In this document: one piece after another, positions 334 to 13,911 of the stretch
How the letters are laid out: every line of letters starts with the position of its first letter
How positions within the stretch are numbered: the first letter of the stretch is position 1
Virus record (IMG/VR): IMGVR_UViG_3300027770_000027
Span: 62,001 to 126,000 of that record
Reading direction: 5' to 3' (one strand)
DNA length: 64,000 bases
The notes under the pieces: model-generated
Seen by the model: the letters and a program-made list of their open reading frames with translations, nothing else
Told to the model about the DNA's origin: nothing
Database searches by the model: none
Program-made: the position numbers and the translations under genes

Positions 334-375
334 CTTGTATATATCTTAGGTGAGGAGAGGGGGAACCGCACGGAC

Positions 376-898: not shown

Positions 899-930
899 TG
901 TTAATATCTTAGTGGATCTAACGGGGAAGC

Positions 931-1128: not shown

Positions 1129-1140
1129 GGTGATTGGGAA

Positions 1141-1788: not shown

Positions 1789-1971
1789 CTACTTGCACAG
1801 GCAGTAGACTCCGAAGAGGGCCAGCCCTCCCACGATGAGGCCGTGGTTCCCCAGGAACGCGAGACATAGGGTTCCCAGGGCGGTTCCGGCCATCGCCATT
1901 CCTAGGAAGGCGGACGGGCATAGGAACCAGAGGGCTGCGAGAACGGCGAGGAACATCATTACTTTCATCAT
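1789..1971 (-). CDS. 60-aa hydrophobic membrane protein
   Basis: Almost entirely hydrophobic; MMK leaderless start. Confidence 0.8.
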   Translation of the reverse strand: MMKVMMFLAVLAALWFLCPSAFLGMAMAGTALGTLCLAFLGNHGLIVGGLALFGVYCLCK

Positions 1972-2032
1972 GTATATATCTTACAGGACTTGAGGGGGAA
2001 GGGAACGCCGGAACGGGAAGGAAGGGAAGCGG

Positions 2033-2057
2033 GGGAGCCCCCACACAGGAGCTCCCC
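2033..2057 (-). terminator. GC-rich hairpin after 2072-2719 (weak U-tract)
   Basis: GGGAGCTCC...GGGGCTCCC stem on the minus strand. Confidence 0.4.
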
Positions 2058-2071
2058 TATGATGAAAGTGA

Positions 2072-2719
2072 TTAGGCTTTGCGCCGGGGGCCTTTGGTTC
2101 CCTTCCGGGTATCCTCAGGCTTGCGCTTCATGTCCTTGGAGTTGCAGAGACAGAACTCAGACAGAGGACATTGGGAACAACCAGCGTCTAGGAAGATATC
2201 GGGGCGCTGGCAGACCCCACGCGTGAGTTCTTCCACGGCTTCTCTAGACTTGAAATCAATCTTAACACCCTTGGCATCAGGATTAAACTTTGGGAGCTCA
2301 GCACGGACCTTGTCTTTACGGTCCTCCATATCTTCTCGAGTAAGGTAGTCCTCCTTAACATTACTACCCACCGTGATATTATCCTCTTTGGCTTTACGGA
2401 CCTTCGGAACTTTAACTTGTTTCGCAGGAGTACTAGCCTTACGACAATCTCCACATACGAACTTAGTAAGAAGTAATTCAATGGTGTTATACTCCGGCTT
2501 AGCCAACTGGCGTTTCAGGTTATCCCCGAACATGGAGGTCTGCTTATTCTTACAGCAAGAGCAATTGATCTTCTGTACCGGGAGGCGATCATTCTCCTTA
2601 TAGAAGGCAACCCACTCCTTAAGGTTCTTGAACTGATCGCCTCCCGAGGCCTGCTTGATGGCCACCTTAGCGGCTTTGGCTGCTGCACCGAACTTCTTAC
2701 GATATACTTTCTTCATCAT
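2072..2719 (-). CDS. Lys-rich protein with several Cys clusters (putative Zn-binding nucleic-acid-binding early protein)
   Basis: CSCC, CGDC and CQRP...CSQC...CLC motifs; basic termini. Confidence 0.8.
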   Translation of the reverse strand: MMKKVYRKKFGAAAKAAKVAIKQASGGDQFKNLKEWVAFYKENDRLPVQKINCSCCKNKQTSMFGDNLKRQLAKPEYNTIELLLTKFVCGDCRKASTPAKQVKVPKVRKAKEDNITVGSNVKEDYLTREDMEDRKDKVRAELPKFNPDAKGVKIDFKSREAVEELTRGVCQRPDIFLDAGCSQCPLSEFCLCNSKDMKRKPEDTRKGTKGPRRKA

Positions 2720-2757
2720 GTAATAATCTTAGCTGAAGTTGTGGGGAAGGGACCGAC

Positions 2758-2991
2758 TTACTTGCCGCAGTAGGCTTCGTCGTACACCGCGTTCATCTCC
2801 TGAGCCGCTTCGAGGCCTTCGCTATATCCTTTGTCTCGGCCAGCTTCAAAGGTCTTCTTCACCAGGGTGACCAGGGAACCGATGTACACGTCCCGGAAGT
2901 CCAGGCGATCCATATTACGGACCGCAATCGTTTCGATCTCGGTGTCGATGTGCTTCTGCAGGAGGGAAAGGATTTCGTCGTTCTTCATCAT
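2758..2991 (-). CDS. DUF6900-like small protein
   Basis: IETIAVRNMDRLDFRDV...FEAG matches the recalled family pattern TLETRNSDxLDFHDV. Confidence 0.65.
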   Translation of the reverse strand: MMKNDEILSLLQKHIDTEIETIAVRNMDRLDFRDVYIGSLVTLVKKTFEAGRDKGYSEGLEAAQEMNAVYDEAYCGK

Positions 2992-3029
2992 GTAATAATC
3001 TTAGCTGAAGTTGTGGGGAAGCTCCCGGC

Positions 3030-3212
3030 TTATCGGCCGAGGTTGTTTAGCTTGCGAATGGCGGCGTGAACTGCCCTAAGCTGGTTTACCAGGGGGTCTC
3101 CCAGACCGACGAGGCCTCCGTCTAGGACGATCTCGTCGATCTGCTTGTTGATGTCCCTGGACCGGTCCTTAAGTGCCGCCAGGGTCTTTGCTCTCTTCAT
3201 CTTGCTCATCAT
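3030..3212 (-). CDS. hypothetical protein (start revised to MMSKMK)
   Basis: TTCCCC-N11-TATGAT-N6-ATGATG. Confidence 0.75.
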   Translation of the reverse strand: MMSKMKRAKTLAALKDRSRDINKQIDEIVLDGGLVGLGDPLVNQLRAVHAAIRKLNNLGR

Positions 3213-3265
3213 GTAATAATCATAGAGCAGAATATGGGGAAGCGCAAGCGCGAATTTGCGTCTCC

Positions 3266-3478
3266 TCAATCAAGGGGGTATAGTTTCTCCTCCTGATCTT
3301 GGTGGGTCATATAAGCCACCGCGTCTGGGGAGAGTTGCGCATGGAGGAGGTCCTGCTCTAATTGCCACCCCATGTGAGGGCATATTCGGCGGGGCATGCC
3401 CTCCTGAGGTGGCGGACGTTCCTGGGCGACCTTCCGACCCATCGGGCCCCATTGCGCTGCGGGTGTATCATCTGACAT
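3266..3478 (-). CDS. hypothetical protein (start MSDDTP)
   Basis: TTCCCG...TATAAT-N6-ATG promoter at 3479-3510. Confidence 0.55.
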   Translation of the reverse strand: MSDDTPAAQWGPMGRKVAQERPPPQEGMPRRICPHMGWQLEQDLLHAQLSPDAVAYMTHQDQEEKLYPLD

Positions 3479-3588
3479 GCTATCATTATAGCGCAGGGTC
3501 ACCGGGAAGGCAATCGGAGCTTCGGGTTCCCCATGATTTTATAATTTGGTAGTTGCAAAAATTTTTTTTGTGATTAGACTTCCCCTAA

Positions 3589-3634
3589 CCGAAATACTGG
3601 CCGAAATCGAGACCGACAATCATCAGGCCGAAAT
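3589..3634. repeat. short direct repeats CCGAAAT (3589, 3601, 3628; variant CCGACAA at 3613)
   Basis: Read directly, in non-coding DNA at the GC boundary. Confidence 0.6.
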
Positions 3635-3673
3635 ACAAACCTGATCTCCTCTTACCATTACTGTTCTATAGAT

Positions 3674-3751
3674 CTACCAGATACCTAACAACAAACTAAT
3701 AACGGCCAAGCCTATTAGAAGTACTTGCAAGGTATCTGATAGATGATTCAT
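3674..3751 (-). CDS. 25-aa TM microprotein (MNHLSDTLQVLLIGLAVISLLLGIW)
   Basis: ATGA overlap with the upstream micro-ORF; hydrophobic. Confidence 0.6.
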   Translation of the reverse strand: MNHLSDTLQVLLIGLAVISLLLGIW

Positions 3752-3825
3752 TCTTGTTTATGAGAACAATGATAACCTAAAACCCAGACGGCTATAAAAC
3801 CTAAGAGTCCTAAGAACTCCATCAT
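3748..3825 (-). CDS. 25-aa TM microprotein (MMEFLGLLGFIAVWVLGYHCSHKQE)
   Basis: ATGA overlaps on both sides. Confidence 0.6.
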   Translation of the reverse strand: MMEFLGLLGFIAVWVLGYHCSHKQE

Positions 3826-3905
3826 ACAATAAACAGGAAGATGAATAGATATGCCAAGATGGATATACTAAGGGCAATCTTAATAAAGTAGTGGTTATCT
3901 TTCAT
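3822..3905 (-). CDS. 27-aa TM microprotein (MKDNHYFIKIALSISILAYLFIFLFIV)
   Basis: Downstream of TTGAGT...TGnTATAAT at 3941-3968. Confidence 0.6.
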   Translation of the reverse strand: MKDNHYFIKIALSISILAYLFIFLFIV

Positions 3906-3976
3906 GGTCTAATATTTTAAGCTGTATTAACTTATACGGTATTATAACATACCTCTCTATTAACTCAAGATCTTTC

Positions 3977-4600
3977 TTAGGCTTTAATGGCTCTTCCTTC
4001 TTTGTCTACTAGATATCCATAGAAGTCCACCTCAGGATACTCATCTCCTAATTGTTTGAATGCTTCTATATTCTTTTCCGCGTCGTCATATAATCTAGCC
4101 ACATCAAACTCTTTACTATCTAGATACCTTCTAATGATAACCGCTTTCTTCTCTGCTATATTCAGATTAGGAATCTGTAGATTACCAGCGCGTTCCACAT
4201 ATACCATATCAATGTTGATCCCATGCTTTCTAAAGGTATCTAGGAATACTTCTTTGTTATCGAAATCCGAACGGGCTGTAATAATGATTACTCTACTCTT
4301 AGGATTCCTATGGACATTACCTAGAATACCAATCATCTTATTCACCATAGAAGGAATGGGAACACTCTCCTGATTAAACTTCTTAGCATCCTTGAACTCC
4401 TGGAAGTCTGGTTTTTCTCCCGGTTGCCACTCATAGGTATTGAACTCACTATTGCTAATAGGCTTGGTCTTTCCTTCCGAGTCTGTCACTCCCACCTTAG
4501 CCGTAGTATGGAACAAAGTATCATCTATATCAAACACCGTAAGAGACCCTAGATTATGTCTATGGGTCGTCTCCGTATAATAGTCTTGAAAGCTTTGCAT
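3977..4600 (-). CDS. HAD-superfamily phosphatase (polynucleotide 3'-phosphatase-like); start revised to MQSFQDYYTE
   Basis: FDIDDT (motif I), ITAR (II), K, YDD (IV). Confidence 0.85.
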   Translation of the reverse strand: MQSFQDYYTETTHRHNLGSLTVFDIDDTLFHTTAKVGVTDSEGKTKPISNSEFNTYEWQPGEKPDFQEFKDAKKFNQESVPIPSMVNKMIGILGNVHRNPKSRVIIITARSDFDNKEVFLDTFRKHGINIDMVYVERAGNLQIPNLNIAEKKAVIIRRYLDSKEFDVARLYDDAEKNIEAFKQLGDEYPEVDFYGYLVDKEGRAIKA

Positions 4601-4601
4601 A

Positions 4602-4814
4602 CTATTCACCGGAGATGGTCTCCTTAATATGTTTCTGTACCGCATCAAACAATTCAGTAACCAACCCGCTGATGTTTTCTTCTATCCTATAAGCCTTAAG
4701 GATGGATCTAAAAGTATCTTTCAAGGTAGCATCTTCCTTAGCATCTGGATTAGCTTCTTCCTTTAAGAGTTGTTCATAGATAGATTCTAATTGTAATTGT
4801 TCGCGGTCTTCCAT
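4602..4814 (-). CDS. small late protein with N-terminal targeting-like peptide (MEDREQLQLESIYEQLLKE)
   Basis: ATAAATA box immediately upstream. Confidence 0.75.
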   Translation of the reverse strand: MEDREQLQLESIYEQLLKEEANPDAKEDATLKDTFRSILKAYRIEENISGLVTELFDAVQKHIKETISGE

Positions 4815-4926
4815 AATCTTTATTTATCAATTCATTTATTTTAAAGTACGAGATAACTTCGTTAATAGCGCGGTATTAAAGGGTATTTTATTAGTTTCTT
4901 CTAGAAAAACCTAAAATAGAATTCCC

Positions 4927-4994
4927 TTTTTCTCACTTTTTGAGCCCTTTTTTGCGATTTTTGTCCCCTTTTTCTCAATTTTTGAAAGGTTTTT
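4927..4994. other. phased T5-6 tracts (intrinsically curved DNA)
   Basis: Tracts start at 4927, 4937, 4948, 4958, 4969, 4979 and 4990, a 10.5-bp period. Confidence 0.9.
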
Positions 4995-5011
4995 GCTATT
5001 AAAGTTAGTGT

Positions 5012-5197
5012 TTAATCCTGTTTATGCAGCAAAAAATGGTAGATATTCTTTATTTGATTTTCGAGATCTTTGACCTTTTCCTCTAGATCTTTAATCCTAT
5101 TCCTAGAGTCTTCAATCAATGCATCCCTAGAATCTTTTATTTCATGCCCATACATTTTAGCGGTAAGAGTGGGTCCTGGATAATCGTAGTCATTCAT
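5012..5197 (-). CDS. hypothetical coiled-coil protein
   Basis: ORF track; packed operon. Confidence 0.7.
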   Translation of the reverse strand: MNDYDYPGPTLTAKMYGHEIKDSRDALIEDSRNRIKDLEEKVKDLENQIKNIYHFLLHKQD

Positions 5198-5198
5198 A

Positions 5199-5561
5199 TT
5201 AATAAGAAGGTTTTCTAAAGGTTTCCTTGCCGTTTAGATAATACACTAGCTCTTCGTCTTTTTCCAGATACTTTATGGTAAAACGATAAGGTTTATTAGG
5301 CTTAAATGTAATCCCATCTACCTGATGCCTCGGCATACTATTAGTACAGACCTCGCCATCGTACTGATGCAATAGCTTCTCATCATCTTCAATGTCTGAA
5401 AGATATAGATCATTTCCGCAAGAGAACTCCATATCAAAGGCTTGTTCAATATGTTCTACTGAACCACAGGCCTTATACAATTCATTGTAGTCAGACTCTT
5501 GATCTTCAGTCAAAGGAAACATTAAATATACATCAAATACTGTGTTACTCATATCTTTCAT
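5199..5561 (-). CDS. hypothetical acidic protein
   Basis: ORF track; packed operon. Confidence 0.75.
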   Translation of the reverse strand: MKDMSNTVFDVYLMFPLTEDQESDYNELYKACGSVEHIEQAFDMEFSCGNDLYLSDIEDDEKLLHQYDGEVCTNSMPRHQVDGITFKPNKPYRFTIKYLEKDEELVYYLNGKETFRKPSY

Positions 5562-5572
5562 ATTTACTCATA

Positions 5573-5758
5573 TTAGACAAGTTTCACTGCCAGTTGAGTG
5601 TCGTAAGGGCCTTCCTTCTTACCATTATAGACAATGTACTCGTTCTGGTAGGCTTCTTGGATTTCATAAGTGCCTTCTTCATTTGTGGCAACAACAATAA
5701 GGTCTCCGTGCTTAGCTTTAAGTGCTTCCAGCTTTTCAATTAGTTCTGAGATCTTCAT
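5573..5758 (-). CDS. hypothetical protein (MKISELIEKLE..HGDL.V type)
   Basis: N-terminus typical of small phage proteins. Confidence 0.75.
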   Translation of the reverse strand: MKISELIEKLEALKAKHGDLIVVATNEEGTYEIQEAYQNEYIVYNGKKEGPYDTQLAVKLV

Positions 5759-5788
5759 ATTAGTATACTTCCTTTGATGTGTTTCGTA

Positions 5789-6016
5789 CTAGTCAACAAG
5801 ATCCACTTGAATGCTAATCCCGTTGAATGTGGCTCCGATTCCTTTGTATTGGAATCGATCATCTGCAATACACTTCAAGGCTTCTTCCACTGCTCCAGCC
5901 GTACGAAGATCAACCGTATCATGTAGTTTACTATACGTACAATTCACCATCATACGACCATCTACACCCCAGGTCCGAACGATCCGCAGCTTCTGTTTCG
6001 ATTTGATCTTCATCAT
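5789..6016 (-). CDS. hypothetical protein (start revised to MMKIK)
   Basis: TTCCCC promoter with leaderless ATGATG. Confidence 0.75.
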   Translation of the reverse strand: MMKIKSKQKLRIVRTWGVDGRMMVNCTYSKLHDTVDLRTAGAVEEALKCIADDRFQYKGIGATFNGISIQVDLVD

Positions 6017-6035
6017 GTATATATTATGTAGGAGG

Positions 6036-6257
6036 TTAGGGGGAAGGTCCACCTGGTTGTCGGCTTTCTAAGACCTCATGGGTTGCAACCTGGCGAATCA
6101 ATTCAATATGCCTATCTGGGTAATCATAACAAGTAAACTTGTAAGAGTTACGAGCAGGCTGCTCATCTTTGAATTCACCCCAACACCAGAACTCTCCATT
6201 GTTATCTCTATAGCCCACTAGATAGGTATATTGATTATCACCGGTTCTCATATCCAT
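6036..6257 (-). CDS. small paralogous-family protein
   Basis: YxxLVGYRD..W...F.DE..A...I.LIR pattern. Confidence 0.7.
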   Translation of the reverse strand: MDMRTGDNQYTYLVGYRDNNGEFWCWGEFKDEQPARNSYKFTCYDYPDRHIELIRQVATHEVLESRQPGGPSP

Positions 6258-6679: not shown

Positions 6680-6685
6680 ATTAAT

Positions 6686-6886: not shown

Positions 6887-6887
6887 A

Positions 6888-7106: not shown

Positions 7107-7150
7107 AATAGAATAAACAGAGAGGAAAGACCTGTATTAACACACTTGTA

Positions 7151-7477
7151 TTAGTGGTTCAATTCCAAGCTATCAACAACGTCTTGGATGGTTTCATAAT
7201 CTTCTTCGGAGATCTCATTCTTAAAATGGGTCTTAGCGATCTCTACCCAATTAACCGCATTGAGATAATCTCCAACAGCTTGATACGCCAAAGACCCCTG
7301 TTTAAGGTCTGCGAACTCCAACTCTTCCACTAGCTGCTCAAAGGCATCTGCCATATGCTCTACATCATCGAACTCCTGGTCTTCTGCCATTGACGCGAAG
7401 ATCTCCTCATACATGAGGTTGATGTTCCAGGTCTGCTTGTTCGTCCAGCCGTTGTATGTCGTATCGTTTCTCATCAT
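7151..7477 (-). CDS. conserved phage hypothetical protein (YNGWTN..TW motif)
   Basis: Motif common in phage and mobile-element proteins; TTCCCC promoter. Confidence 0.8.
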   Translation of the reverse strand: MMRNDTTYNGWTNKQTWNINLMYEEIFASMAEDQEFDDVEHMADAFEQLVEELEFADLKQGSLAYQAVGDYLNAVNWVEIAKTHFKNEISEEDYETIQDVVDSLELNH

Positions 7478-7515
7478 GTAAATATCTTATAGGAAGAAAG
7501 GGGGAACCACACGCC

Positions 7516-7926
7516 TTACAGACTGCCGACATGCAGGACCTTGTCATCCTGGGAAAATTCAAAGCCGTGGCTGTAGTAACCGTTATGTACATTCCATAGA
7601 TGAAGGAATTGTTCCTGATCTCCCTTAATCATACGAAAGACTGCCCGGTTGTCATCATCGTAGTAATCATCAATGCTAGTCGAAAGCTTTTCAAAGAACG
7701 CAGGATCAAAGGTCCAACCTTCGAGTAGTTGATTAACATCTTTACCATCCTGGATGGTGTCATTAAACAAATGATCGTGAAGGTCGGTAGTAACCTTGTC
7801 ACTAACATACCAACCAAAGCTCTCACAGCAGCTAGCTGAGAAATCATATCCGACAAGAACATTGTTCTCGTCTACGAAGTTAATCTTAGAACCCCAGCTA
7901 TCAGGATCTGCATGGAAATAACGCAT
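7516..7926 (-). CDS. conserved phage hypothetical protein (CCE...HNGYYSH motif)
   Basis: Motif recognition. Confidence 0.8.
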   Translation of the reverse strand: MRYFHADPDSWGSKINFVDENNVLVGYDFSASCCESFGWYVSDKVTTDLHDHLFNDTIQDGKDVNQLLEGWTFDPAFFEKLSTSIDDYYDDDNRAVFRMIKGDQEQFLHLWNVHNGYYSHGFEFSQDDKVLHVGSL

Positions 7927-7974
7927 AGTTGTATTGTATAGAGGTCGTGTGGTTGTATTGTTTAGAGGTAAGAC

Positions 7975-8340
7975 TTACCGCTCCATGGAAGACATGAAAC
8001 GATCTTCGAAATCATTCATGTAGAGGAACTCTGGGTCATTCACCGGAGCATCAAAGGTTGGTTCAAACTTCCCGGCACTTTCAGGAAACTTAGCTTCTCC
8101 TGCCACTTTCCCGTTAATCAAGATACGGACACAACGAAGCTCGTTCGGGTGGCAGACATATTGCCGGGAGTTATTAACAACCCAATCCATCTCCCGCTTG
8201 AGGTCTTGCAGAGCACTGGCTCGGGTCATTCCCACGACCGAATAGATCGTATTCCAATGAATTACTCCAGTATCAGTGAAGACCTGGATCTGAAGGCGAC
8301 CGACGACTGTTTCTTCTGCGAATGATTGTGTTTCCATCAT
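7975..8340 (-). CDS. hypothetical protein
   Basis: Leaderless MM start behind a TTCCCC promoter. Confidence 0.8.
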   Translation of the reverse strand: MMETQSFAEETVVGRLQIQVFTDTGVIHWNTIYSVVGMTRASALQDLKREMDWVVNNSRQYVCHPNELRCVRILINGKVAGEAKFPESAGKFEPTFDAPVNDPEFLYMNDFEDRFMSSMER

Positions 8341-8382
8341 GTATATATCTTAGACGAGGTTGTGGGGAACCGCAAGGACTAC

Positions 8383-8601
8383 TTAAAGGACCACCTGCTC
8401 TGGCTCACTGGCCTGACACACTAGCTCGAGCACCTCCTCCATGTAGGAGACTCCTGCGGCGAAGTTCGCGCGGCCACGGTTGTCGGAGACGTACTGGAGG
8501 ATCACCTGGACTGCTTCAGCCACTGAGACGTGGTTGGCCTTGAGGATCTCTGCGGCGGCGGACTTGGCTGCTTCGGACTGGATGTATTCGTTCTTCATCA
8601 T
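8383..8601 (-). CDS. hypothetical protein
   Basis: MMKN start, own promoter, GC-rich codons. Confidence 0.8.
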   Translation of the reverse strand: MMKNEYIQSEAAKSAAAEILKANHVSVAEAVQVILQYVSDNRGRANFAAGVSYMEEVLELVCQASEPEQVVL

Positions 8602-8643
8602 GTTTATATCTTAGAGGAGGTAATGGGGAAACTCAACGCTTAC

Positions 8644-8904
8644 TTAGATGCCCTGGGCAAGTACGGCGTCCTCTGGGCTCTGCCAGTAGGTCTTCGAGAA
8701 GGTCACTATCCAGGTGTCTCTGTTCACTCGAAGGGCTTTGAACACCAGAGCATTGTCCTCATTGTCCAGCACCGTGATGGCATCCACTGAAGAGGGATGG
8801 AAGACGCGGACCTTGTTGACGATGTACTGGACGCGCTTGGCTTCCTTGGCGAGGACGTTGACTTGCTTCGTGCTGAGGACTCGTGTGTATGTGTTCTTCA
8901 TCAT
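8644..8904 (-). CDS. hypothetical protein
   Basis: MMKN start, own promoter. Confidence 0.8.
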   Translation of the reverse strand: MMKNTYTRVLSTKQVNVLAKEAKRVQYIVNKVRVFHPSSVDAITVLDNEDNALVFKALRVNRDTWIVTFSKTYWQSPEDAVLAQGI

Positions 8905-8913
8905 GTATATATC

Positions 8914-9135
8914 TTAGACGAGGTTGTGGGGAAACGCAAGGGCTTCTGCCTTCTCAAGTGCTTCTTCTCCATCCATTCCCAGCTTCTCGATCTGCTCGAT
9001 CGTGGCGTTGGCTGCTTCACAAGCGGACCTGCGGAGCTTTGCGGCTTCATCCCCCCAAACACCGTCCAGGTCGAAAGCCTGTTGGAGTTGCAAGGTGAGC
9101 TGCTCAAGGAGAATGTCGATCGTGTTTTTCATCAT
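8914..9135 (-). CDS. hypothetical protein
   Basis: MMKN start; C-terminus runs through the next promoter. Confidence 0.8.
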   Translation of the reverse strand: MMKNTIDILLEQLTLQLQQAFDLDGVWGDEAAKLRRSACEAANATIEQIEKLGMDGEEALEKAEALAFPHNLV

Positions 9136-9144
9136 GTAATAATC

Positions 9145-9345
9145 TTAGTCGATCTTAGGGGGAACCGCACGAGCATTGTGCTGCTGGGTCTCATAGCTCC
9201 ACATGACTTGTTCCCAATACTTGATTTCTAATTCCAGGTGTCTAGGAATTAAACATAAGTCTATCTTTCTTCTAGGAAGTTGATCATCTAATTCATTCAA
9301 TCGAGCAATGGCTTGTTCGTAATGTTCTCGAGATATAGGAATCAT
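9145..9345 (-). CDS. hypothetical protein
   Basis: ATGA overlap with the upstream gene. Confidence 0.7.
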   Translation of the reverse strand: MIPISREHYEQAIARLNELDDQLPRRKIDLCLIPRHLELEIKYWEQVMWSYETQQHNARAVPPKID

Positions 9346-9716
9346 TTGCTTTGTAACAATGCTACTCTTTCAGGAACTTCTAGTAACCAGGTTAATCTAA
9401 ACTCACCACCAAATCGATCGGAGATGTAATTTAAGCTACCTTCAATTGAATCAATGGATTCGTAACCATAGGTCTCATCTCCTGTTCGACGATCTGGTTC
9501 GTATGGTGTTATGCTTTTGTATTTTTTGCAGGTTCTTATGTTTCTTTGTTCAAGATAAGACCGATACTTGATAATAACATTCTGATGTTTAATGATTCGT
9601 TCACAGATCTTTTCTAGGTTCCAGTGATAATAAAAGTCTTCAAAGACCTGGTTAGCAATAACTGATCGCCAGGTTTTGGCTTTCTTCTCTAGTCGCTTAA
9701 AGGTCTTGTTCTTCAT
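9342..9716 (-). CDS. hypothetical protein
   Basis: ORF track. Confidence 0.7.
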   Translation of the reverse strand: MKNKTFKRLEKKAKTWRSVIANQVFEDFYYHWNLEKICERIIKHQNVIIKYRSYLEQRNIRTCKKYKSITPYEPDRRTGDETYGYESIDSIEGSLNYISDRFGGEFRLTWLLEVPERVALLQSK

Positions 9717-9717
9717 A

Positions 9718-9981
9718 TTACTTCTCTACAATAGTAACGATGCCTTCTAATACACCGTAAGTAGACTTCTCAGTATACTTGTAAGTGTCTGGTTGTTCTC
9801 CTTCTTTACGTACTCGTGTTAGAATCCAAAGGTCTGTTTGTTTCCAGGAGCAATTGATAAGCTTCTGATCCTTTTCAAGTTCTACGGTCATATTACCACC
9901 AACTGCTCGAGTAAAATAGTTACAGGAAGAAAGAGAAAGAATGGAAACAAGGCCGATTACTTTAAGAATGTTATTGATCAT
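9718..9981 (-). CDS. putative lipoprotein
   Basis: Signal peptide with LSSC lipobox; GG.MTV.L...WK..LW.LTR pattern. Confidence 0.75.
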   Translation of the reverse strand: MINNILKVIGLVSILSLSSCNYFTRAVGGNMTVELEKDQKLINCSWKQTDLWILTRVRKEGEQPDTYKYTEKSTYGVLEGIVTIVEK

Positions 9982-10023
9982 ACGTTAATAATACATGCTG
10001 TGATGGGGAAGAGCAACGTGGTA

Positions 10024-10272
10024 TTAACGAGAAACTCGACTGGTCAATGCTGTCTCATACTTGAGAGCATTACGAACTTCTTCAGGAGTTCCCCCGGTTG
10101 TTGCCAGGGTAACCAAATGGCGTAGAGCTGAGGTAAGAACCCCAGTTGCATAGGGGTAATTGATTGCACCATCTCCTTTACGGCGAGCAGCGTCTTCTAC
10201 TTCATTCAGGTAGTTGCGAAGCAGTTCGTTGATCTCTGAGACGCTGACGGTGTTCTTCTTTCTTTTCATCAT
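10024..10272 (-). CDS. hypothetical protein
   Basis: MMK start, TTCCCC promoter. Confidence 0.8.
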   Translation of the reverse strand: MMKRKKNTVSVSEINELLRNYLNEVEDAARRKGDGAINYPYATGVLTSALRHLVTLATTGGTPEEVRNALKYETALTSRVSR

Positions 10273-10303
10273 GTAATAATCTTACATGATGATGGGGGGA
10301 ACG

Positions 10304-10849
10304 TCACTGTTGAACGCCGTAGAGACTCGCGAGCAAGGACTCGGCTTTATTCAAAGCACCTGGAATACTTGTCTTGTCTACTTTCAATTCTTTAGATGGC
10401 ATAATACCAAATGAATCATAAGCTCTGATGAGTATATGACTTGAGTTATGTATTAAAGTAACTGTGTTGGTAATGTCAGTTAATTGAGCAGTACGACCCT
10501 TGTTTGGATGTTCTGGATCTAATACCTTATGAGTGCTAAGAAAGATACGAGTCCAATCATAACCTTGTTTGCTTAAATCTTTAATCACTTGCGGGGCTTC
10601 CATCAATAGATCTTGAAGGTTTCCATTCTTTAGGTCTTTACTAATAGACTTCTCTCTAGACCAATCTTCTTCACCAAAAACCAAACCATGTATAGAACCA
10701 AAGAACTCTGCTCTAGTAGATAGGTATTGAAACATCTTTGCCAGGACTTCAGGGTCTCTATTAACCTTTGCCTTATTAACGCTCAAAGCATTGGACTCTA
10801 GGACCTTTGCGTAGGCCTGTTCTAATAAAATGGAGTCTTTGGTTCTCAT
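10304..10849 (-). CDS. putative internal virion protein with MRTKDSILLEQAY leader
   Basis: Shared N-terminal peptide; late operon. Confidence 0.8.
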   Translation of the reverse strand: MRTKDSILLEQAYAKVLESNALSVNKAKVNRDPEVLAKMFQYLSTRAEFFGSIHGLVFGEEDWSREKSISKDLKNGNLQDLLMEAPQVIKDLSKQGYDWTRIFLSTHKVLDPEHPNKGRTAQLTDITNTVTLIHNSSHILIRAYDSFGIMPSKELKVDKTSIPGALNKAESLLASLYGVQQ

Positions 10850-10853
10850 ATGA

Positions 10854-11408
10854 TTAACGTTTCATTCCACCGATTCTAAAGCTTTGTCCAGCTTTTGCAT
10901 GAACTTCTGCAGGGGAGTCTTCCAGGAAACGAACACTAACTGTGGTGCCTTGATTTACATTATAGTCCTGACCTTTAATGGTTAAAATTAAATTACCGTT
11001 CTTTGTGTAATCTTGATCTCCGGAAGATCTCTTAACATCCTGAATAACGCCTTGAGCAAATACTCCATCCTCTAATTCAAACTTTGTATGAGCAACACTA
11101 CCACCAGATCCAGGCACTGTAGCACTACCATCATCACGACCATAACCAGAGGTTTGTTTATGACCAGTGACTCTAGACAAAGACACTTCTTTACCAACCA
11201 GGGTCTTTAGTTTAGCAAAGGCATTATCCTTTTCAAAAGATGGGAGCATATTGAATCTAGGAATAAGATTATTAGCTTCGTCTTCAGATATAGGAGCTTG
11301 TTGATCCTTGAAATGCATTGCATCAATCTCTTTAGCTCTCCTGGAACTAATCCCTTCTTGGACAGTTTCATAGGCTTGCTCAAGTAAAATAGTGTCTTTA
11401 GTTCTCAT
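10854..11408 (-). CDS. putative internal virion protein with MRTKDTILLEQAY leader (start revised)
   Basis: ATAAATA 9 nt upstream of the ATG at 11408. Confidence 0.8.
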   Translation of the reverse strand: MRTKDTILLEQAYETVQEGISSRRAKEIDAMHFKDQQAPISEDEANNLIPRFNMLPSFEKDNAFAKLKTLVGKEVSLSRVTGHKQTSGYGRDDGSATVPGSGGSVAHTKFELEDGVFAQGVIQDVKRSSGDQDYTKNGNLILTIKGQDYNVNQGTTVSVRFLEDSPAEVHAKAGQSFRIGGMKR

Positions 11409-11419
11409 TGTTATATTAT

Positions 11420-11770
11420 TTATTCTCCTTGTTCGTCTTCTTCTGTAGGATGAGACATATAATCCCACTTATCCCAGCTACTCATTTCAGGTTCTTCTTC
11501 TTCATCTTGATCATTGCTTTGATCCTTAGCTTTAATGAGAGCGGCTAGTTGAACTGCTAACTTGGCAATCTCTGGGTCCATTACTCTTTGATGCCCGTAT
11601 TGACCCCAATGAGCTAGTTCATCCAATACAGCTTCCATACTATGAGGAAGAGTCCCACTTGGTTTATTTGGATTTGCTAGGATATCTTTAGCCTCTTTCT
11701 CTGGATTGAATTCCATGACAAGCTTATAAGCTTCATGTATATTGGTTAATTCTTTACTCGGGAGTCTCAT
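11420..11770 (-). CDS. putative internal virion protein (MRLPSKELTNIHEAYKLVME)
   Basis: ATAAATA upstream; variant leader; acidic tail. Confidence 0.75.
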   Translation of the reverse strand: MRLPSKELTNIHEAYKLVMEFNPEKEAKDILANPNKPSGTLPHSMEAVLDELAHWGQYGHQRVMDPEIAKLAVQLAALIKAKDQSNDQDEEEEPEMSSWDKWDYMSHPTEEDEQGE

Positions 11771-11832
11771 TTGTTTTTATTATTTATCCTCAAAGAGCAT
11801 CATAAACACAAACCAAAATAAGATTAAAGCAA

Positions 11833-12063
11833 TCATTTGTTGGCGTTGCATTTGTAATGTTCGTACAAAGCTTCTTCGATTTCTCTACGTTCTTTTCTAT
11901 TAAATTGACTAGTGACATCATCACATTCCCAGTTTTGAATCCTTACTGAATGTGGACAACCTTGTTGATCTAGATATTCAAATACGAATAGTCTGTAGTC
12001 ATCATATACAATTTCTGTGACTCGTTCAATGATAGCTCGAAGGGTTGATTTAACAATTTTCAT
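11833..12063 (-). CDS. hypothetical protein
   Basis: ORF track. Confidence 0.65.
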   Translation of the reverse strand: MKIVKSTLRAIIERVTEIVYDDYRLFVFEYLDQQGCPHSVRIQNWECDDVTSQFNRKERREIEEALYEHYKCNANK

Positions 12064-12182
12064 TTAAGCAAATAAGCAATAAGAATGGTGGCTGTGACTG
12101 CTCCTGTGAATGATGCTACAACTACTCCTAGAAACATAAGAGTATAGCGAAGGTATGGTTTGTCTGTATTAAACGTTTTCAT
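12060..12182 (-). CDS. 40-aa single-TM protein
   Basis: Not in the track; ATGA overlap with 11833-12063. Confidence 0.6.
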   Translation of the reverse strand: MKTFNTDKPYLRYTLMFLGVVVASFTGAVTATILIAYLLK

Positions 12183-12228
12183 TATTCCGGATAGTGGACT
12201 TCAACTACTTTATGTACTTTGGTTTGTT

Positions 12229-12579
12229 CTACCAATTGATGTCTTTATTTTCAACAATGCCGACAGGAGAACCATCTGTACGAAAGATGACAATCCGGAA
12301 ATCTTCCTTAGCTTTGCTCCAAGCTTCTAATTGGTCAAACTCTTTATTACCAAACATCATCAACGTATGGCCCCGACGCAATTCAGCTCGAAAAGTACTC
12401 AAAGCTACTGAAGGAATATTAGATGACAAAGCTATAAGAGTCTTACCCAGATCAATAAGATCTTCTGCAAATTCAGAGACATCATTATCTCCTTGAGTGT
12501 CATTCAAGAAATCCATCATGGCTTCCTGATACCGTGTGATCATGTCTTCTGCGTTAGCAATCAATGTGTTCTTCATCAT
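12229..12579 (-). CDS. hypothetical protein
   Basis: MMKN start, TTCCCC promoter. Confidence 0.8.
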   Translation of the reverse strand: MMKNTLIANAEDMITRYQEAMMDFLNDTQGDNDVSEFAEDLIDLGKTLIALSSNIPSVALSTFRAELRRGHTLMMFGNKEFDQLEAWSKAKEDFRIVIFRTDGSPVGIVENKDINW

Positions 12580-12617
12580 GTAAATATATTAGTTAAAGTT
12601 ATGGGGAACCTCAAGGC

Positions 12618-12938
12618 TTACTTGCAGAGAGCCTTGCGAATCGGATCTACTCCGGTCAGGCGAACCAACTGCCTCGCATACACCGGGACCTTCCTCATTA
12701 CGAGGGCTAGCTGCTTGGGAGTCAATCTCCCGTATTGCTGGAAGGCTTTGGCCATGCGAGTGAGGATGAAAGCATCACAGCAACGGAACCCCACTCCATT
12801 GTGCATCTCTGTGCGGTCCTTATCTTGCTCCTCATCAGTCTGCTCCTTGGCGATGCGGACCAAGGCTCGAACAGCCCATGCTTCATCGGTGGCGAGCTTG
12901 TTTTGGAGAGCGGCGATAACGTCTTCTTGTTTCATCAT
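12618..12938 (-). CDS. conserved phage hypothetical protein (NGVGF...DA..LT...LTPKQ)
   Basis: Motif recognition; own promoter. Confidence 0.8.
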   Translation of the reverse strand: MMKQEDVIAALQNKLATDEAWAVRALVRIAKEQTDEEQDKDRTEMHNGVGFRCCDAFILTRMAKAFQQYGRLTPKQLALVMRKVPVYARQLVRLTGVDPIRKALCK

Positions 12939-12976
12939 GTAAATATATTAGCAGAGGATGGAGGGAACCTCCCGCT

Positions 12977-13441
12977 CTATTCCAGTGTCACGAGACCTGG
13001 AGCGATGCGATACACGATACAACCGAGGACTTCGGTTCCCTGCTTCCAATGAGCTTCACAGCGGTAAACTCCTTCTTCTACAAGCTTATTACAAAACACG
13101 GTAATCTCTAAATCACGACCGGTCTTAACCTTAAAAGCATAAGCTCCTTCACCAGGAGATTCTACTCGAACGATACGAGTACGAACCTTAAAGCCTGCAT
13201 GCTTCTGAGGAATGGGGTTGCCGTTGATCATCGTGGGCAGAGAAAACTTCCCGGGAGTATCATAGGTGACCACTCCACTCTGCTCGCCGCCTACAACAAC
13301 CTCCGGAATGTTATTGCGGTTGGAAGGCGTAAACAAAGTCCCTCGATCAGCATGTGCAAGAGCGTAGCTGAGGACATAGATCACGTTGCGGTTGTGCTGC
13401 TTCTGATTGTTCTGCGTAGGCTTGAAGGTGTTTCTCATCAT
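12977..13441 (-). CDS. hypothetical protein
   Basis: MM start, own promoter. Confidence 0.8.
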   Translation of the reverse strand: MMRNTFKPTQNNQKQHNRNVIYVLSYALAHADRGTLFTPSNRNNIPEVVVGGEQSGVVTYDTPGKFSLPTMINGNPIPQKHAGFKVRTRIVRVESPGEGAYAFKVKTGRDLEITVFCNKLVEEGVYRCEAHWKQGTEVLGCIVYRIAPGLVTLE

Positions 13442-13453
13442 GTAAATATCTTA

Positions 13454-13882
13454 TCAGACCAAGTGGGGAACCTCACGCGCGATCTCAGCTTTCAGTTCAG
13501 CTTCGAACTTTTCGCTGTTAATTAGCCGAGAGAGCTCGTCCGCCTCTTCTGGGGTTACGAACATGTCGACCCAGAAATTTCTCCCGTAAGTGTTAAGTTC
13601 GTGTTTGACGATATATCCCTGAGAACAACCACAGGAACACCCAGCCTTGGAGGAGAACTTAATACTACAAGCATCCGGGAACAACTCCTTCAAAGCCTTC
13701 GAGTTTGCTTTACTAGCCAAGGCTTTGACCTTACCCCAGGTCTTACATTTGAAGGGGAGGTTGTAGATCTGGTTCTTATCAAACCAAGCATCCACTACCT
13801 TATCTAGGAAGGATTCAACATAGACAATGCTGTTCCCGATTTTGTTGCGCTGACTGGATTGGGTGATCGTTGCTTTCATCAT
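13454..13882 (-). CDS. hypothetical protein (FS.KAGCSCGCS.G motif)
   Basis: Cys motif seen in phage proteins; own promoter. Confidence 0.8.
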   Translation of the reverse strand: MMKATITQSSQRNKIGNSIVYVESFLDKVVDAWFDKNQIYNLPFKCKTWGKVKALASKANSKALKELFPDACSIKFSSKAGCSCGCSQGYIVKHELNTYGRNFWVDMFVTPEEADELSRLINSEKFEAELKAEIAREVPHLV

Positions 13883-13911
13883 GTAATAATCTTACATGAT
13901 GATGGGGGGAA

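What the first reader, a model, noticed from the sequence alone, without database searches (positions are those of the whole stretch)
1969..13911. Systematic leaderless translation with a doubled ATGATG start (MMK...)
Seen: in most cassettes the ATG is exactly 6 nt after the -10 box, at the expected +1. It is very often ATG-ATG-AAR, with variants AAG-ATG (333, 29706) and ACG-ATG (29320) that keep the second ATG. No Shine-Dalgarno is visible. Inference: the mRNAs are leaderless, and the doubled ATG buffers start-site wobble. This could bypass host initiation control. The phage also carries an initiator-type tRNA with an atypical anticodon stem.
Basis: partly seen in the sequence, partly recalled or inferred. 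Interest (0 to 1): 0.6.

Follow-up and report, generated by a model that had tools for sequence, protein, structure and literature searches.

The report
Leaderless phage gene cassettes, doubled ATG
A 227-kb lake-water phage distantly related to T4 places a promoter directly against the start codon of dozens of small genes, so their mRNAs most likely have no leader and no ribosome-binding site, and most of these genes begin with a conserved doubled ATG whose purpose is still unproven.

Summary
A position matrix finds 50 promoter cassettes in the 227-kb phage genome and none in shuffles. Each has an upstream box cTTGnG-GTTCCCC, 11 nt, TAAGAT-like -10, then 6 nt ending in AC. ATG sits on the predicted +1 in 35 cassettes, at +2 in 7 and at +4 in 4. 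All 16 cassettes in 1969-13911 have the 6-nt spacing, and 15 start ATGATG.

Second-codon ATG occurs in 21 of 35 cassette genes against 2 of 248 other genes. Shine-Dalgarno motifs are absent genome-wide, while two cultured T4-like relatives show clear SD peaks by the same method. The same promoter type precedes tRNA genes, so it is a transcription signal.

In 156 further distinct cassettes from other lake metagenome contigs, C(-1)/A(+1) is nearly invariant and 93 start ATGATG. The second ATG is as conserved as the -10 box, and the encoded proteins are unrelated.

Leaderless expression is therefore well supported by sequence but not shown, because no 5'-end data could be obtained. "Wobble buffering" is one plausible reading of the doubled ATG, not a demonstrated one. 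The initiator-type tRNA with a two-G:C anticodon stem is confirmed.

Verdict: a new variant of a known kind.

The parts
1963..2015 (-). Cassette: box CGTTCC-CTTCCCC, -10 TAAGAT, ATATAC, ATGATGAAA at +1 = 1971; 60-aa ORF
2711..2763 (-). Cassette: -10 TAAGAT, TATTAC, ATGATGAAG at +1 = 2719; 215-aa ORF
2983..3035 (-). Cassette: -10 TAAGAT, TATTAC, ATGATGAAG at +1 = 2991; 77-aa ORF. Promoter is about 40 nt identical to the one at 2719
3204..3256 (-). Cassette: CTTGCG box, -10 TATGAT, TATTAC, ATGATGAGC at +1 = 3212; 60-aa ORF
6008..6060 (-). Cassette: -10 CATAAT, ATATAC, ATGATGAAG at +1 = 6016; 75-aa ORF
7469..7521 (-). Cassette: -10 TAAGAT, ATTTAC, ATGATGAGA at +1 = 7477; 108-aa ORF (DUF7249)
8332..8384 (-). 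Cassette: CTTGCG-GTTCCCC (8376-8364), -10 TAAGAT (8352-8347), ATATAC, ATGATGGAA at +1 = 8340. The upstream gene's stop TAA is at 8385-8383, so the whole 42-nt intergenic gap is promoter
8593..8645 (-). Cassette: -10 TAAGAT, ATAAAC, ATGATGAAG at +1 = 8601; 72-aa ORF
8896..8948 (-). Cassette: -10 TAAGAT, ATATAC, ATGATGAAG at +1 = 8904; 86-aa ORF
9127..9179 (-). Cassette: -10 TAAGAT, TATTAC, ATGATGAAA at +1 = 9135; 73-aa ORF. The only RNA-run-specific hole in contig cover (9122-9184) lies over this promoter
9973..10025 (-). Cassette: -10 TATTAT, TAACGT, ATGATC (single ATG) at +1 = 9981; 87-aa ORF
10264..10316 (-). Cassette: -10 TAAGAT, TATTAC, ATGATGAAA at +1 = 10272. A 10-bp inverted repeat (CATCATGTAA / TTACATGATG) brackets the -10 box
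12571..12623 (-). Cassette: CTTGAG box, -10 TAATAT, ATTTAC, ATGATGAAG at +1 = 12579; 116-aa ORF
12930..12982 (-). Cassette: -10 TAATAT, ATTTAC, ATGATGAAA at +1 = 12938; 106-aa ORF (phrog_21015)
13433..13485 (-). Cassette: -10 TAAGAT, ATTTAC, ATGATGAGA at +1 = 13441; 154-aa ORF
13874..13926 (-). Cassette: -10 TAAGAT, TATTAC, ATGATGAAA at +1 = 13882; 142-aa ORF. Carries the same inverted repeat as at 10272
14..66 (-). Cassette outside the given range: -10 TAATAT, TATTAC, ATGATGAAA at +1 = 22
328..380 (-). Variant cassette: -10 TAAGAT, ATATAC, then AAG-ATG (predicted +1 = 336, ATG at 333); 90-aa ORF
891..943 (-). Cassette with a single ATG at +2 (ATTAAC-A-ATG; predicted +1 = 899)
29187..29239 (-). 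Cassette before a 303-aa ATPase/helicase-like gene: ATGATGAAA at +1 = 29195. Orthologues in two other phage contigs keep ATG at +1 (MMKI..., MKMN...)
29315..29367 (-). Variant cassette: ACG-ATG (predicted +1 = 29323, ATG at 29320); 28-aa ORF
29701..29753 (-). Variant cassette: AAG-ATG (predicted +1 = 29709, ATG at 29706); 43-aa ORF
33819..33871 (-). Same promoter type with no ORF: -10 TAAGAT 33839-33834, predicted +1 = 33827, 24 nt upstream of tRNA-Leu (5' end at 33803). Shows the motif is a transcription signal
34349..34424 (-). Initiator-type tRNA-Met: C1xA72, G2:C71, C3:G70, A73, A11:U24; anticodon stem U29:A41 / G30:C40 / G31:C39
32370..32443 (-). Elongator-type tRNA with CAU anticodon (G1:C72; no G:C run in the anticodon stem). 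Preceded by TTGATT-17 nt-TATAAT with the TTTCCC box

Best explanation
The region is a hyperplastic block of promoter-plus-gene cassettes in a 227-kb lake-water phage distantly related to T4.

Structure of a cassette (shown). Each small gene has its own promoter:
- an upstream box cTTGnG-GTTCCCC at -36..-24;
- a variable 11-nt spacer;
- a -10 hexamer, usually TAAGAT;
- a 6-nt discriminator ending in AC.

Mechanism (inferred, not shown). This geometry puts the favoured pyrimidine(-1)/purine(+1) start, 7 nt after the -10 box, on the A of the ATG. The mRNA then begins with its start codon and is translated by 5'-terminal-AUG (leaderless) initiation without a Shine-Dalgarno site. Because internal cistrons have no SD, each gene needs its own promoter or a stop-start overlap. 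That would explain the density of about one promoter per gene.

Genome-wide pattern (shown). No SD appears anywhere. T4-type late boxes TAA[AG]TA also abut ATGs. About half of the remaining genes are stop-start coupled.

The second ATG. It is shown to be a constrained element, part of a conserved 5' block A-T-G-A-T-G-A-A-R. My preferred reading, at about 0.35, is an in-frame back-up start that keeps an AUG within the first 4 nt whatever the exact 5' end. This is inference only.
For: Promoter matrix: 50 sites against 0 in shuffles. ATG is on predicted +1 in 35, at +2 in 7 and at +4 in 4.

Independent cassettes: in 156 distinct cassettes from 27 other lake metagenome loci, -1 is C in 150 and +1 is A in 151. 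An ATG lies at +1, +2 or +4 in 147.

SD absent: no peak over 282 ORFs. The same script finds SD peaks, and no -10/ATG adjacency, in Ochrobactrum phage OC and Pelagibacter phage Mosig.

Transcription signal: the same promoter type precedes tRNA genes with no ORF.

No terminators: terminator-like sites are not enriched, and the intergenic gap equals the promoter.

Conservation in relatives: related phage contigs keep the box, the -10, the 6-nt gap and the ATG. Three orthologues of the gene at 29195 all keep ATG at +1.

Unstructured 5' ends: the first 40 nt fold at -1.4 against -6.2 kcal/mol for internal windows, p = 4e-13.

Late genes: TAA[AG]TA lies 5-8 nt before the ATG of 52 genes against about 3 expected. 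A gp55-type late sigma factor is encoded (phrog_234, E = 2e-27).

Established rules: TANNNT 6-7 nt before an ORF marks leaderless genes in Deinococcus-Thermus (PMC12340547). In mycobacteria a 5' ATG or GTG is necessary and sufficient (PMC4633059).

Constraint on the second ATG:
- 21/35 against 2/248 genes.
- 48 cassette proteins include only one homologous pair.
- Pairwise identity at +4..+6 is 0.87, the same as the -10 box (0.85), against 0.43 in the spacer and 0.30 in coding sequence.
- ATGATG occurs with five different -10 hexamers.

Either position can carry the only ATG: ATG-ATT/ATC/ATA starts and AAG/ACG-ATG starts both exist.
Against: No 5'-end data. The RNA run is held as contigs that break at the repeats exactly as the DNA run does. 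One RNA contig (10273-13444) runs across two cassette promoters, which means read-through or DNA carry-over.

The RNA polymerase and the host are unknown. The strongest upstream conservation (TTCCCC at -29..-24) is not a standard -35 hexamer, so the start-site rule is borrowed from sigma-70 systems.

Against wobble buffering:
- The CA start dinucleotide is nearly invariant, so little wobble is expected.
- ATGATT is the commonest form in some relatives, and relatives with TATAAT-type boxes use single ATGs.
- The AAG-ATG variants would carry a 3-nt leader. The mycobacterial rule would not allow that.

Cassettes share long identical blocks (for example 2719/2991, 8340/8904, 10272/13882), so they are not fully independent observations.
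Confidence: 0.7

Rival explanations
1. Best-context reading. The mRNAs are leaderless, but the second ATG is not a spare start. It belongs to a preferred 5'-terminal context A-U-G-A-U-(G)-A-A-R, A/U-rich, C-free and unstructured, that favours promoter escape or 70S binding. Met at codon 2 is a by-product.
For: 27 of 35 +1 starts are ATGAT, including ATT, ATC and ATA. ATGATT is the most frequent form in some relatives. It occurs 11 times among the 156 metagenome cassettes. Conservation runs on through +7..+12 (AAR AAY), with identity 0.66 and 0.51. The predicted 5' ends are very weakly folded.
Against: G at +6 is kept far more often than this context would require: 93 ATGATG against 12 ATGAT[TC]. 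Met is also enriched at codons 3-8 (11/288 against 11/1488), which suggests that in-frame AUGs as such are favoured. In mycobacteria no sequence downstream of the start affects leaderless initiation (PMC4633059).
Confidence: 0.25
2. Hitchhiking. The promoter together with the first few codons spreads among cassettes as one recombining unit, as PeSL elements do in T4-type phages. ATGATGAAR is a founder sequence with no function of its own.
For: The conserved block runs from the upstream stop (TAAGTAG) to about +13. Several cassette pairs share identical stretches of 40 nt or more. PeSL-mediated shuffling of ORFans is documented in T4-like phages (PMC4122927).
Against: The 11-nt spacer inside the unit has diverged to 0.37-0.43 identity, while +4..+6 stays at 0.63-0.87, level with the -10 box. 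ATGATG is found with many spacer, -10 and discriminator variants and in contigs from about two dozen datasets.
Confidence: 0.1
3. Not leaderless. Transcripts start upstream and read through the array. The A/T-rich -10/discriminator island next to the ATG then acts as an SD-independent translation enhancer on internal cistrons.
For: There are no terminators between cassettes. One RNA-library contig spans two cassette promoters. The host evidently needs no SD, so some SD-independent internal initiation must exist for the 145 genes that lack an adjacent promoter.
Against: The motif has promoter anatomy: a TTG 17 nt upstream of a TAnnnT hexamer. It also precedes tRNA genes. A fixed 6-nt gap with invariant CA is what a start site needs, not what an enhancer needs. 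Most genes without a promoter are stop-start coupled instead (66 of 121).
Confidence: 0.1
4. DNA operator. ACATGATGAA at -2..+8 is a half-site for a phage or host DNA-binding regulator that shuts these promoters off, and its overlap with the start codon is incidental.
For: Promoters at 10272 and 13882 carry a perfect 10-bp inverted repeat (CATCATGTAA / TTACATGATG) around the -10 box. Those at 29995 and 26548 carry partial copies.
Against: Only 3-4 of 50 promoters have the second arm. The block is always in frame with a long ORF. The AAG-ATG and A-ATG variants break the half-site but keep an ATG.
Confidence: 0.07

Closest known systems
Leaderless middle/late transcripts of Thermus thermophilus phage phiYS40
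   Same: A large, low-GC myovirus whose promoters abut the start codons, so that most transcripts of whole temporal classes lack a leader and an SD (summarised in PMC3594737).
   Different: That case was shown by primer extension; this one is inferred from sequence. Here the pattern covers a -10-plus-upstream-box class and a T4-type late class. The genome is T4-related (gp43, gp55) and comes from lake water, and the starts are doubled. The original paper could not be read here.
-10 motif adjacent to ORFs in Deinococcus-Thermus (also leaderless genes of Actinobacteria)
   Same: TANNNT lies 6-7 nt upstream of the start codon with no SD, which is read as leaderless mRNA (PMC12340547). In mycobacteria a 5' ATG or GTG is necessary and sufficient (PMC4633059).
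   Different: Those are cellular genomes in which SD-led genes coexist with leaderless ones. This phage has no SD at all. It adds a strongly conserved upstream box and a conserved +4..+9 block, whereas the mycobacterial study found no downstream determinant.
PeSL (promoter-early stem-loop) cassettes in hyperplastic regions of T4-like phages
   Same: Repeated, near-identical promoter sequences flank small ORFan genes in variable regions of T4-type genomes and can serve as recombination points (PMC4122927).
   Different: PeSLs are composite terminator/promoter elements. Here there is no stem-loop or terminator. The repeat unit runs into the first 3-4 codons, and the genes would be leaderless.
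T4 late promoters (TATAAATA, gp55/gp33/gp45)
   Same: The phage encodes a gp55-type late sigma factor. TAA[AG]TA boxes sit at the -10 position before structural genes. The T4 late box lies about one helical turn upstream of the start (PMC2988020).
   Different: T4 late mRNAs have leaders with SD sites (my own knowledge). Here the box lies 5-6 nt from the ATG in 37 genes, so the late mRNAs would also be leaderless.
Natural initiator tRNAs lacking the first G:C pair of the anticodon stem
   Same: Alphaproteobacteria and some mycoplasmas have A29:U41 in place of G29:C41 (PMC5389676). The phage tRNA also lacks only the first G:C pair.
   Different: The phage pair is U29:A41 (pyrimidine:purine), which breaks the R:Y rule noted in that paper. 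The identical 17-nt anticodon arm was found mainly in initiator tRNAs of Candidatus Saccharibacteria (95 of 119 hits).

Membership tests
Leaderless genes (promoter -10 adjacent to the ORF) | TANNNT-type -10 hexamer 6-7 nt upstream of the start codon | tested here: met
   35 of 50 cassettes at 6 nt and 7 at 7 nt. 16 of 16 in the given range are at 6 nt.
Leaderless genes (promoter -10 adjacent to the ORF) | No Shine-Dalgarno sequence upstream of the start | tested here: met
   No SD 4-mer peak over 282 ORFs. Positive controls show peaks.
Leaderless genes (promoter -10 adjacent to the ORF) | Transcript 5' end coincides with the first base of the start codon | not testable with these tools
   The only RNA run is held as contigs, which cannot show starts and break at the repeats as the DNA run does.
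Leaderless genes (promoter -10 adjacent to the ORF) | Translation initiates on the 5'-terminal AUG | not testable with these tools
   Needs ribosome profiling, toeprinting or N-terminal proteomics.
PeSL cassettes of T4-like phages | Repeated conserved promoter sequence flanking small variable ORFs in a hyperplastic region | tested here: met
   The proteins are unrelated ORFans.
PeSL cassettes of T4-like phages | Stem-loop/terminator joined to the promoter | tested here: not met
   Terminator-like sites are not enriched (11 against 11.4 expected). The stop codon lies 2-6 nt from the upstream box.
PeSL cassettes of T4-like phages | Serves as a point of recombination or indels between close relatives | tested here: inconclusive
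   Identical promoter blocks sit before unrelated genes, and the same promoters precede different genes in metagenome contigs. No pairwise genome comparison was made.
T4-like phages (T4 superfamily) | gp43-type family B DNA polymerase | tested here: met
   856-aa protein, 28-30% identity over 95-100% of its length to gp43 of cyanophages, pelagiphage and others.
T4-like phages (T4 superfamily) | gp55-type late sigma factor and TATAAATA-like late boxes | tested here: met
   phrog_234, E = 2e-27. TAA[AG]TA enriched before 52 genes.
T4-like phages (T4 superfamily) | gp23-type major capsid protein and T4 core virion genes | not tested
   The 398-aa protein I guessed to be the capsid protein has no tblastn match in 50,697 phage records. 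The true capsid gene was not identified.
T4-like phages (T4 superfamily) | MotA/AsiA middle-promoter system | tested here: inconclusive
   PF09158 and PF09010 found nothing, but the controls could not ring.
Bacterial initiator tRNA (tRNA-fMet) | Mismatch at 1:72 with G2:C71, C3:G70 and A73 | tested here: met
   C1xA72, G2:C71, C3:G70, A73, read.
Bacterial initiator tRNA (tRNA-fMet) | Three consecutive G:C pairs 29:41, 30:40, 31:39 | tested here: not met
   U29:A41, G30:C40, G31:C39. Natural exceptions are known (PMC5389676).
Bacterial initiator tRNA (tRNA-fMet) | A11:U24 and CAU anticodon | tested here: met

The most novel reading that the evidence does not exclude
A whole lineage of T4-related lake phages has given up Shine-Dalgarno-led initiation. 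It expresses both its box-plus-TAAGAT promoter class and its gp55-type late class as leaderless mRNAs. It carries its own initiator tRNA with a U29:A41 anticodon stem of the kind otherwise seen in Saccharibacteria/CPR initiators, which may point to an unexpected host. It has also evolved a doubled, in-frame 5'-terminal AUG as a dedicated device that makes leaderless initiation robust to the exact 5' end. That would be a new cis-element of leaderless translation.
Probability: 0.3. Interest if true: 0.75.

Novelty: new variant of a known kind. Interest (0 to 1): 0.62.

Why it matters
Leaderless initiation is regarded as an old and widespread but poorly understood route into the ribosome. Its accepted rule is minimal: an AUG at the 5' end.

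This phage family offers about 200 natural cassettes in which the promoter, the start site and the first three codons are fixed while everything else varies. Such a set can show what else matters for leaderless expression: the second AUG, the A-rich codons 3-4, and the tolerated 1-3-nt leaders.

It would also be the first T4-type genome in which late (gp55) promoters produce leaderless mRNAs, and a case where gene order (one promoter per gene, or stop-start coupling) follows from the lack of SD-led internal initiation.

On the practical side, gene callers that expect an SD will mis-start many genes of such phages. The cassettes are also compact, portable expression units for hosts that translate leaderless mRNAs.

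Tried and rejected
RNA evidence. One metatranscriptome run (X2) holds 96% of the region, but only as assembled contigs. Laid on 7950-13949 beside the DNA run X1, its contigs break at the same promoter repeats as the DNA contigs, so they give no start sites. The single RNA-only hole (9122-9184, over the promoter at 9135) is at most a hint.

Host identification failed.
- Megablast of 12 kb against phages: no match.
- psbA, WhiB, ribosomal protein S21 and peptide deformylase are absent.
- Cassette proteins match only scattered phage ORFans of Proteobacteria and Flavobacterium phages.
- The protein atlas gave viral clusters only.

Saccharibacteria as host. The initiator-tRNA arm points to Saccharibacteria/CPR. 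I treat this as a weak lead for four reasons:
- Only two base pairs distinguish the arm.
- Saccharibacteria leaderless promoters are TGnTATAAT-type and coexist with SD genes.
- A 227-kb phage in such small cells seems unlikely.

Other dead ends.
- MotA/AsiA, as an explanation of the -30 box, were not found, but the controls could not ring.
- The 303-aa gene has no orthologue in three partial relatives. Orthologues were found elsewhere.
- My first viral-contig pattern had a wrong spacer length and found nothing. It was corrected.
- No paper in the library links leaderless mRNA with tandem AUGs.
- The phiYS40 paper and Brock et al. 2008 are not held.
- phiKZ-type promoters were considered and dropped. 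phiKZ has 31-40-nt leaders and no leaderless transcripts (PMC8244752), and this phage has a gp55-type sigma factor, which implies use of the host core polymerase.
- Paralogy as the cause of MMK was rejected.

Full report
WHAT THE WINDOW IS. The window is bases 62,001-126,000 of a 227,352-bp IMG/VR virus record (36% G+C, CheckV 100% complete). It has no nucleotide match among 50,697 deposited phages.

Its 856-aa family B DNA polymerase is 28-30% identical over its full length to gp43 of T4-like cyanophages, pelagiphage Mosig, Ochrobactrum phage OC and others. It encodes a gp55-type late sigma factor (phrog_234, E = 2e-27) and both T4-type RNA ligases. It also carries 11-12 tRNA genes.

The DNA is held by freshwater and lake-water runs. 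Relatives at 60-70% protein identity occur in other IMG/VR contigs. I call it a distant T4-related jumbo phage from lake water. The host is unknown.

THE OBSERVATION. All cassette genes but one lie on the minus strand. Read on that strand, each cassette runs as follows:
- the stop codon of the previous gene (often within TAAGTAG);
- cTTGnG-GTTCCCC;
- 11 variable nt;
- TAAGAT (or TAATAT, TATGAT, CATAAT);
- 6 nt ending in AC;
- ATG ATG AAR.

A position matrix built only from -40..-1 finds 50 sites in the genome and none in three shuffles. 38 of them lie in the window. ATG occupies the 7th nt after the -10 hexamer in 35 cases, the 8th in 7, the 10th in 4 (AAG-ATG twice, ACG-ATG, AAT-ATG) and the 6th in one.

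In 1969-13911 there are 16 cassettes. All have the 6-nt gap, 15 start ATGATG and one starts ATGATC. Second-codon ATG is found in 21 of 35 cassette genes whose ATG is at +1, against 2 of 248 other genes (Fisher p = 2e-20; Met frequency 1.6%).

IS IT A PROMOTER? The TTG lies 17 nt upstream of a TAnnnT hexamer, which is sigma-70 geometry. In relatives the upstream hexamer is a plain TTGACx followed by TTTCCC.

The same motif occurs twice with no ORF behind it but a tRNA gene. At 33839-33834 (TAAGAT) the predicted +1 is 24 nt before tRNA-Leu. A TTGATT-17-TATAAT promoter with the TTTCCC box precedes the tRNA at 32443. A translation signal would have no business there.

The most conserved part of the upstream element is TTCCCC at -29..-24, not the -35 hexamer. 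In position it resembles an activator box such as T4's MotA box. MotA and AsiA were not detected, but that test was inconclusive. Whether these are early or middle promoters is therefore open.

WHY LEADERLESS.
(a) The 6-nt gap places the A of ATG at the 7th position after the -10 box, preceded by C. In 156 further distinct cassettes recovered from 27 loci of other lake metagenome contigs, -1 is C in 150 and +1 is A in 151. The preference for a pyrimidine(-1)/purine(+1) start about 7 nt after the -10 box is my own knowledge of sigma-70 promoters.

(b) There is no room for an SD and none is present. Over 282 mechanically called ORFs of the whole genome, GGAG/GAGG/AGGA show no peak at any distance. 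The same script gives clear peaks at 5-9 nt in pelagiphage Mosig and in Ochrobactrum phage OC, and no -10/ATG adjacency there.

(c) The intergenic gap equals the promoter (42 nt at 8340). Terminator-like sites are not enriched. A gene can be 5'-terminal only on the transcript from its own promoter, which would explain about one promoter per gene.

(d) The first 40 nt from the predicted +1 are almost unstructured: -1.4 against -6.2 kcal/mol for internal windows (p = 4e-13).

(e) The geometry is conserved in relatives although the sequences differ. Three orthologues of the 303-aa gene at 29195 start MMKV, MMKI and MKMN, each with ATG on +1.

(f) The pattern is genome-wide. TAA[AG]TA, the core of the T4 late box, lies 5-8 nt before the ATG of 52 genes against about 3 expected. 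The T4 late box sits at the -10 position (PMC2988020). Of the genes with no adjacent promoter, 66 of 121 start within 5 nt of the preceding stop.

These features match the accepted sequence signature of leaderless genes: TANNNT 6-7 nt before the ORF (PMC12340547) and a 5' ATG/GTG that is necessary and sufficient (PMC4633059). What is missing is any direct 5'-end measurement.

RNA DATA. A lake metatranscriptome run holds 96% of the region, but only as assembled contigs. Laid on 7950-13949 beside the DNA run, its contigs end at the same promoter repeats as the DNA contigs: 8340-8364, 8904-8928, 10273-10293 and 13874-13912. These breaks are assembly effects. One RNA contig spans 10273-13444 across two promoters, which means read-through or DNA carry-over. 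The only RNA-specific gap, 9122-9184, lies over the promoter and first 14 nt of the gene at 9135. This neither shows nor refutes leaderless starts.

THE DOUBLED ATG. It is not inherited with the proteins. Among 48 cassette proteins only one pair is homologous, and most are ORFans.

It is not simple hitchhiking either. Within this genome, pairwise identity is 0.63 at +4..+6 against 0.37 in the spacer and 0.28 at +19..+30. ATGATG occurs with five -10 variants and six discriminators.

The independent set is clearer. A pattern that did not specify positions beyond +3 retrieved 52 distinct foreign cassettes. 46 of them read ATGATG, and the other six look like chance hits lacking the upstream TTG. 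Among all 156 matrix-defined cassettes in those loci the counts are:
- 93 ATGATG;
- 28 A-ATG;
- 12 ATGAT[TC];
- 7 AAG-ATG;
- 1 ATA-ATG;
- 6 ATG-other;
- 9 with none.

In that set, identity at +4..+6 is 0.87, equal to the -10 box (0.85) and the TTCCCC box (0.86). The spacer is 0.43 and coding sequence 0.30. The third codon is AAR in 66 of 93. So the second ATG, and more weakly AAR, is under constraint.

What the constraint is for remains open.

In favour of a spare in-frame start:
- Either position can carry the only ATG (ATG-ATT/ATC/ATA, or AAG/ACG-ATG).
- An ATG lies within the first 4 nt in 147 of 156 cassettes.
- Met is also enriched at codons 3-8.

Against wobble buffering:
- The invariant CA should fix the start tightly.
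- ATGAT[TC] starts exist.
- Relatives with TATAAT-type boxes have single ATGs followed by A-rich codons.

I put the back-up-start reading at about 0.35, a preferred 5' context at about 0.25, a DNA-level operator or promoter role at about 0.1-0.2, and pure hitchhiking at about 0.1. No paper in the searchable library connects tandem AUGs with leaderless mRNAs.

THE INITIATOR tRNA. The tRNA at 34349-34424 (-) has the bacterial initiator marks C1xA72, G2:C71, C3:G70, A73 and A11:U24, with anticodon CAU. It has only two of the three G:C pairs (U29:A41). The second CAU tRNA (32370-32443) is elongator-type (G1:C72).

A relative (G001) carries an initiator-like tRNA (A1xA72, A11:U24) that also has U29:A41. 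Natural initiators without the first G:C pair are known, but they have A29:U41 (PMC5389676).

The exact 17-nt anticodon arm of the phage tRNA was found in 119 or more bacterial genome stretches. 95 of these are initiator tRNAs of Candidatus Saccharibacteria and allied CPR lineages. In those same loci TAnnnT peaks 6 nt before ATG (134 of 709 ORFs, mostly TGnTATAAT), next to a normal SD peak.

This makes a CPR-like host a lead, but no more than that. The scan was truncated. The promoters differ in type. Those genomes do use SD. The size of the phage also argues against such small cells.

COMPARISON WITH KNOWN SYSTEMS. In function this resembles phage phiYS40 of Thermus, whose middle and late mRNAs are leaderless (PMC3594737). 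It also resembles the -10-adjacent genes of Deinococcus-Thermus and Actinobacteria.

In genome architecture it resembles the PeSL promoter cassettes of T4-like hyperplastic regions (PMC4122927), but it lacks their stem-loop.

It differs from all of these in four ways: the total absence of SD in a T4-related genome, T4-type late boxes abutting ATGs, the conserved box at -30, and the conserved doubled ATG. phiKZ-type jumbo phages are not comparable. They have 31-40-nt leaders and no leaderless transcripts (PMC8244752).

VERDICT. Leaderless expression is the best-supported mechanism (0.7) but is inferred, not shown. The doubled ATG is a real, selected element of unknown role. "Bypassing host control" is untested. 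I rate this a new variant of a known kind, of moderate to good interest.

Noticed in passing
window 1-14000 (and genome 61149-62000 just upstream of the window): The 26 cassette ORFs of this block form a compositional island: G+C 0.53 and GC3 0.66, against 0.36 and 0.27 for the 248 non-cassette ORFs. Nearly all the phage tRNAs have U at position 34 and so read A-ending codons (Leu-UAG, Ile-UAU, Leu-UAA, Gln-UUG, Pro-UGG, Thr-UGU, Ala-UGC, Lys-UUU). One idea: genes expressed first are tuned to a G+C-rich host, and the rest rely on phage tRNAs. Alternatively, the cassettes were acquired from G+C-rich phages.
   Followed up: partly
whole genome; e.g. window 14673 (-) and many structural genes outside the window: TAA[AG]TA, the core of the T4 late box, lies 5-8 nt upstream of the ATG of 52 genes (21 at 5 nt, 16 at 6 nt), and a gp55-type late sigma factor is encoded at genome 192358-192987. 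Late mRNAs would then also be leaderless, which I have not seen described for a T4-type phage.
   Followed up: partly
window 10273-10297 and 13883-13907; partial copies near 29996-30020 and 26549-26573: A perfect 10-bp inverted repeat (CATCATGTAA, 5 nt, TTACATGATG) brackets the -10 box and the +1 of two promoters. It may be an operator. Only the downstream arm is transcribed.
   Followed up: no
loci L026-L144 (genome contigs, mostly Candidatus Saccharibacteria): Saccharibacteria initiator tRNAs carry U28:A42 and U29:A41 in the anticodon stem (two G:C pairs only). The neighbouring genes show a strong leaderless signature (TGnTATAAT, 6 nt, ATG; 134 of 709 ORFs) beside a normal SD peak. Many of these loci are syntenic, so the counts are not independent.
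   Followed up: partly
metagenome loci L149-L191: Four cassettes read ...TTAAC-A-ATC-AAG-AAC, that is the A-ATG form with ATG replaced by ATC and the next in-frame ATG several codons downstream. This may be a non-AUG leaderless start or decaying cassettes. AAG is the recurrent replacement of the first ATG (7 of 8 cases), so A at +1 and G at +3 are kept even when the first triplet is not a start codon.
   Followed up: no
whole genome: Of 121 genes that have no adjacent promoter and a same-strand upstream neighbour, 66 start within 5 nt of the preceding stop codon (TAATG, ATGA, TAAT-ATG and similar). This suggests termination-reinitiation as the second mode of SD-free initiation.
   Followed up: partly
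window 34039-34109 (-) and 31926-32016 (-): Rfam finds a twelfth tRNA at 34039-34109 that ARAGORN did not list. The tRNA-Ile (UAU) at 31926-32016 is 91 nt long, which suggests an insertion or intron.
   Followed up: no
window 3478-3513 (-): One gene (ATG at 3478) has a textbook TTGCCT-17 nt-TATAAT promoter, also exactly 6 nt from its ATG, without the full TTCCCC consensus. The leaderless geometry is therefore not tied to the cassette box.
   Followed up: no
genome 164165-165364 (outside the window; locus L002): A 398-aa protein behind a late-type box, which I first took for the capsid protein, has no tblastn match in 50,697 phage records. It has 45-69% identical relatives in eight IMG/VR contigs.
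   Followed up: no
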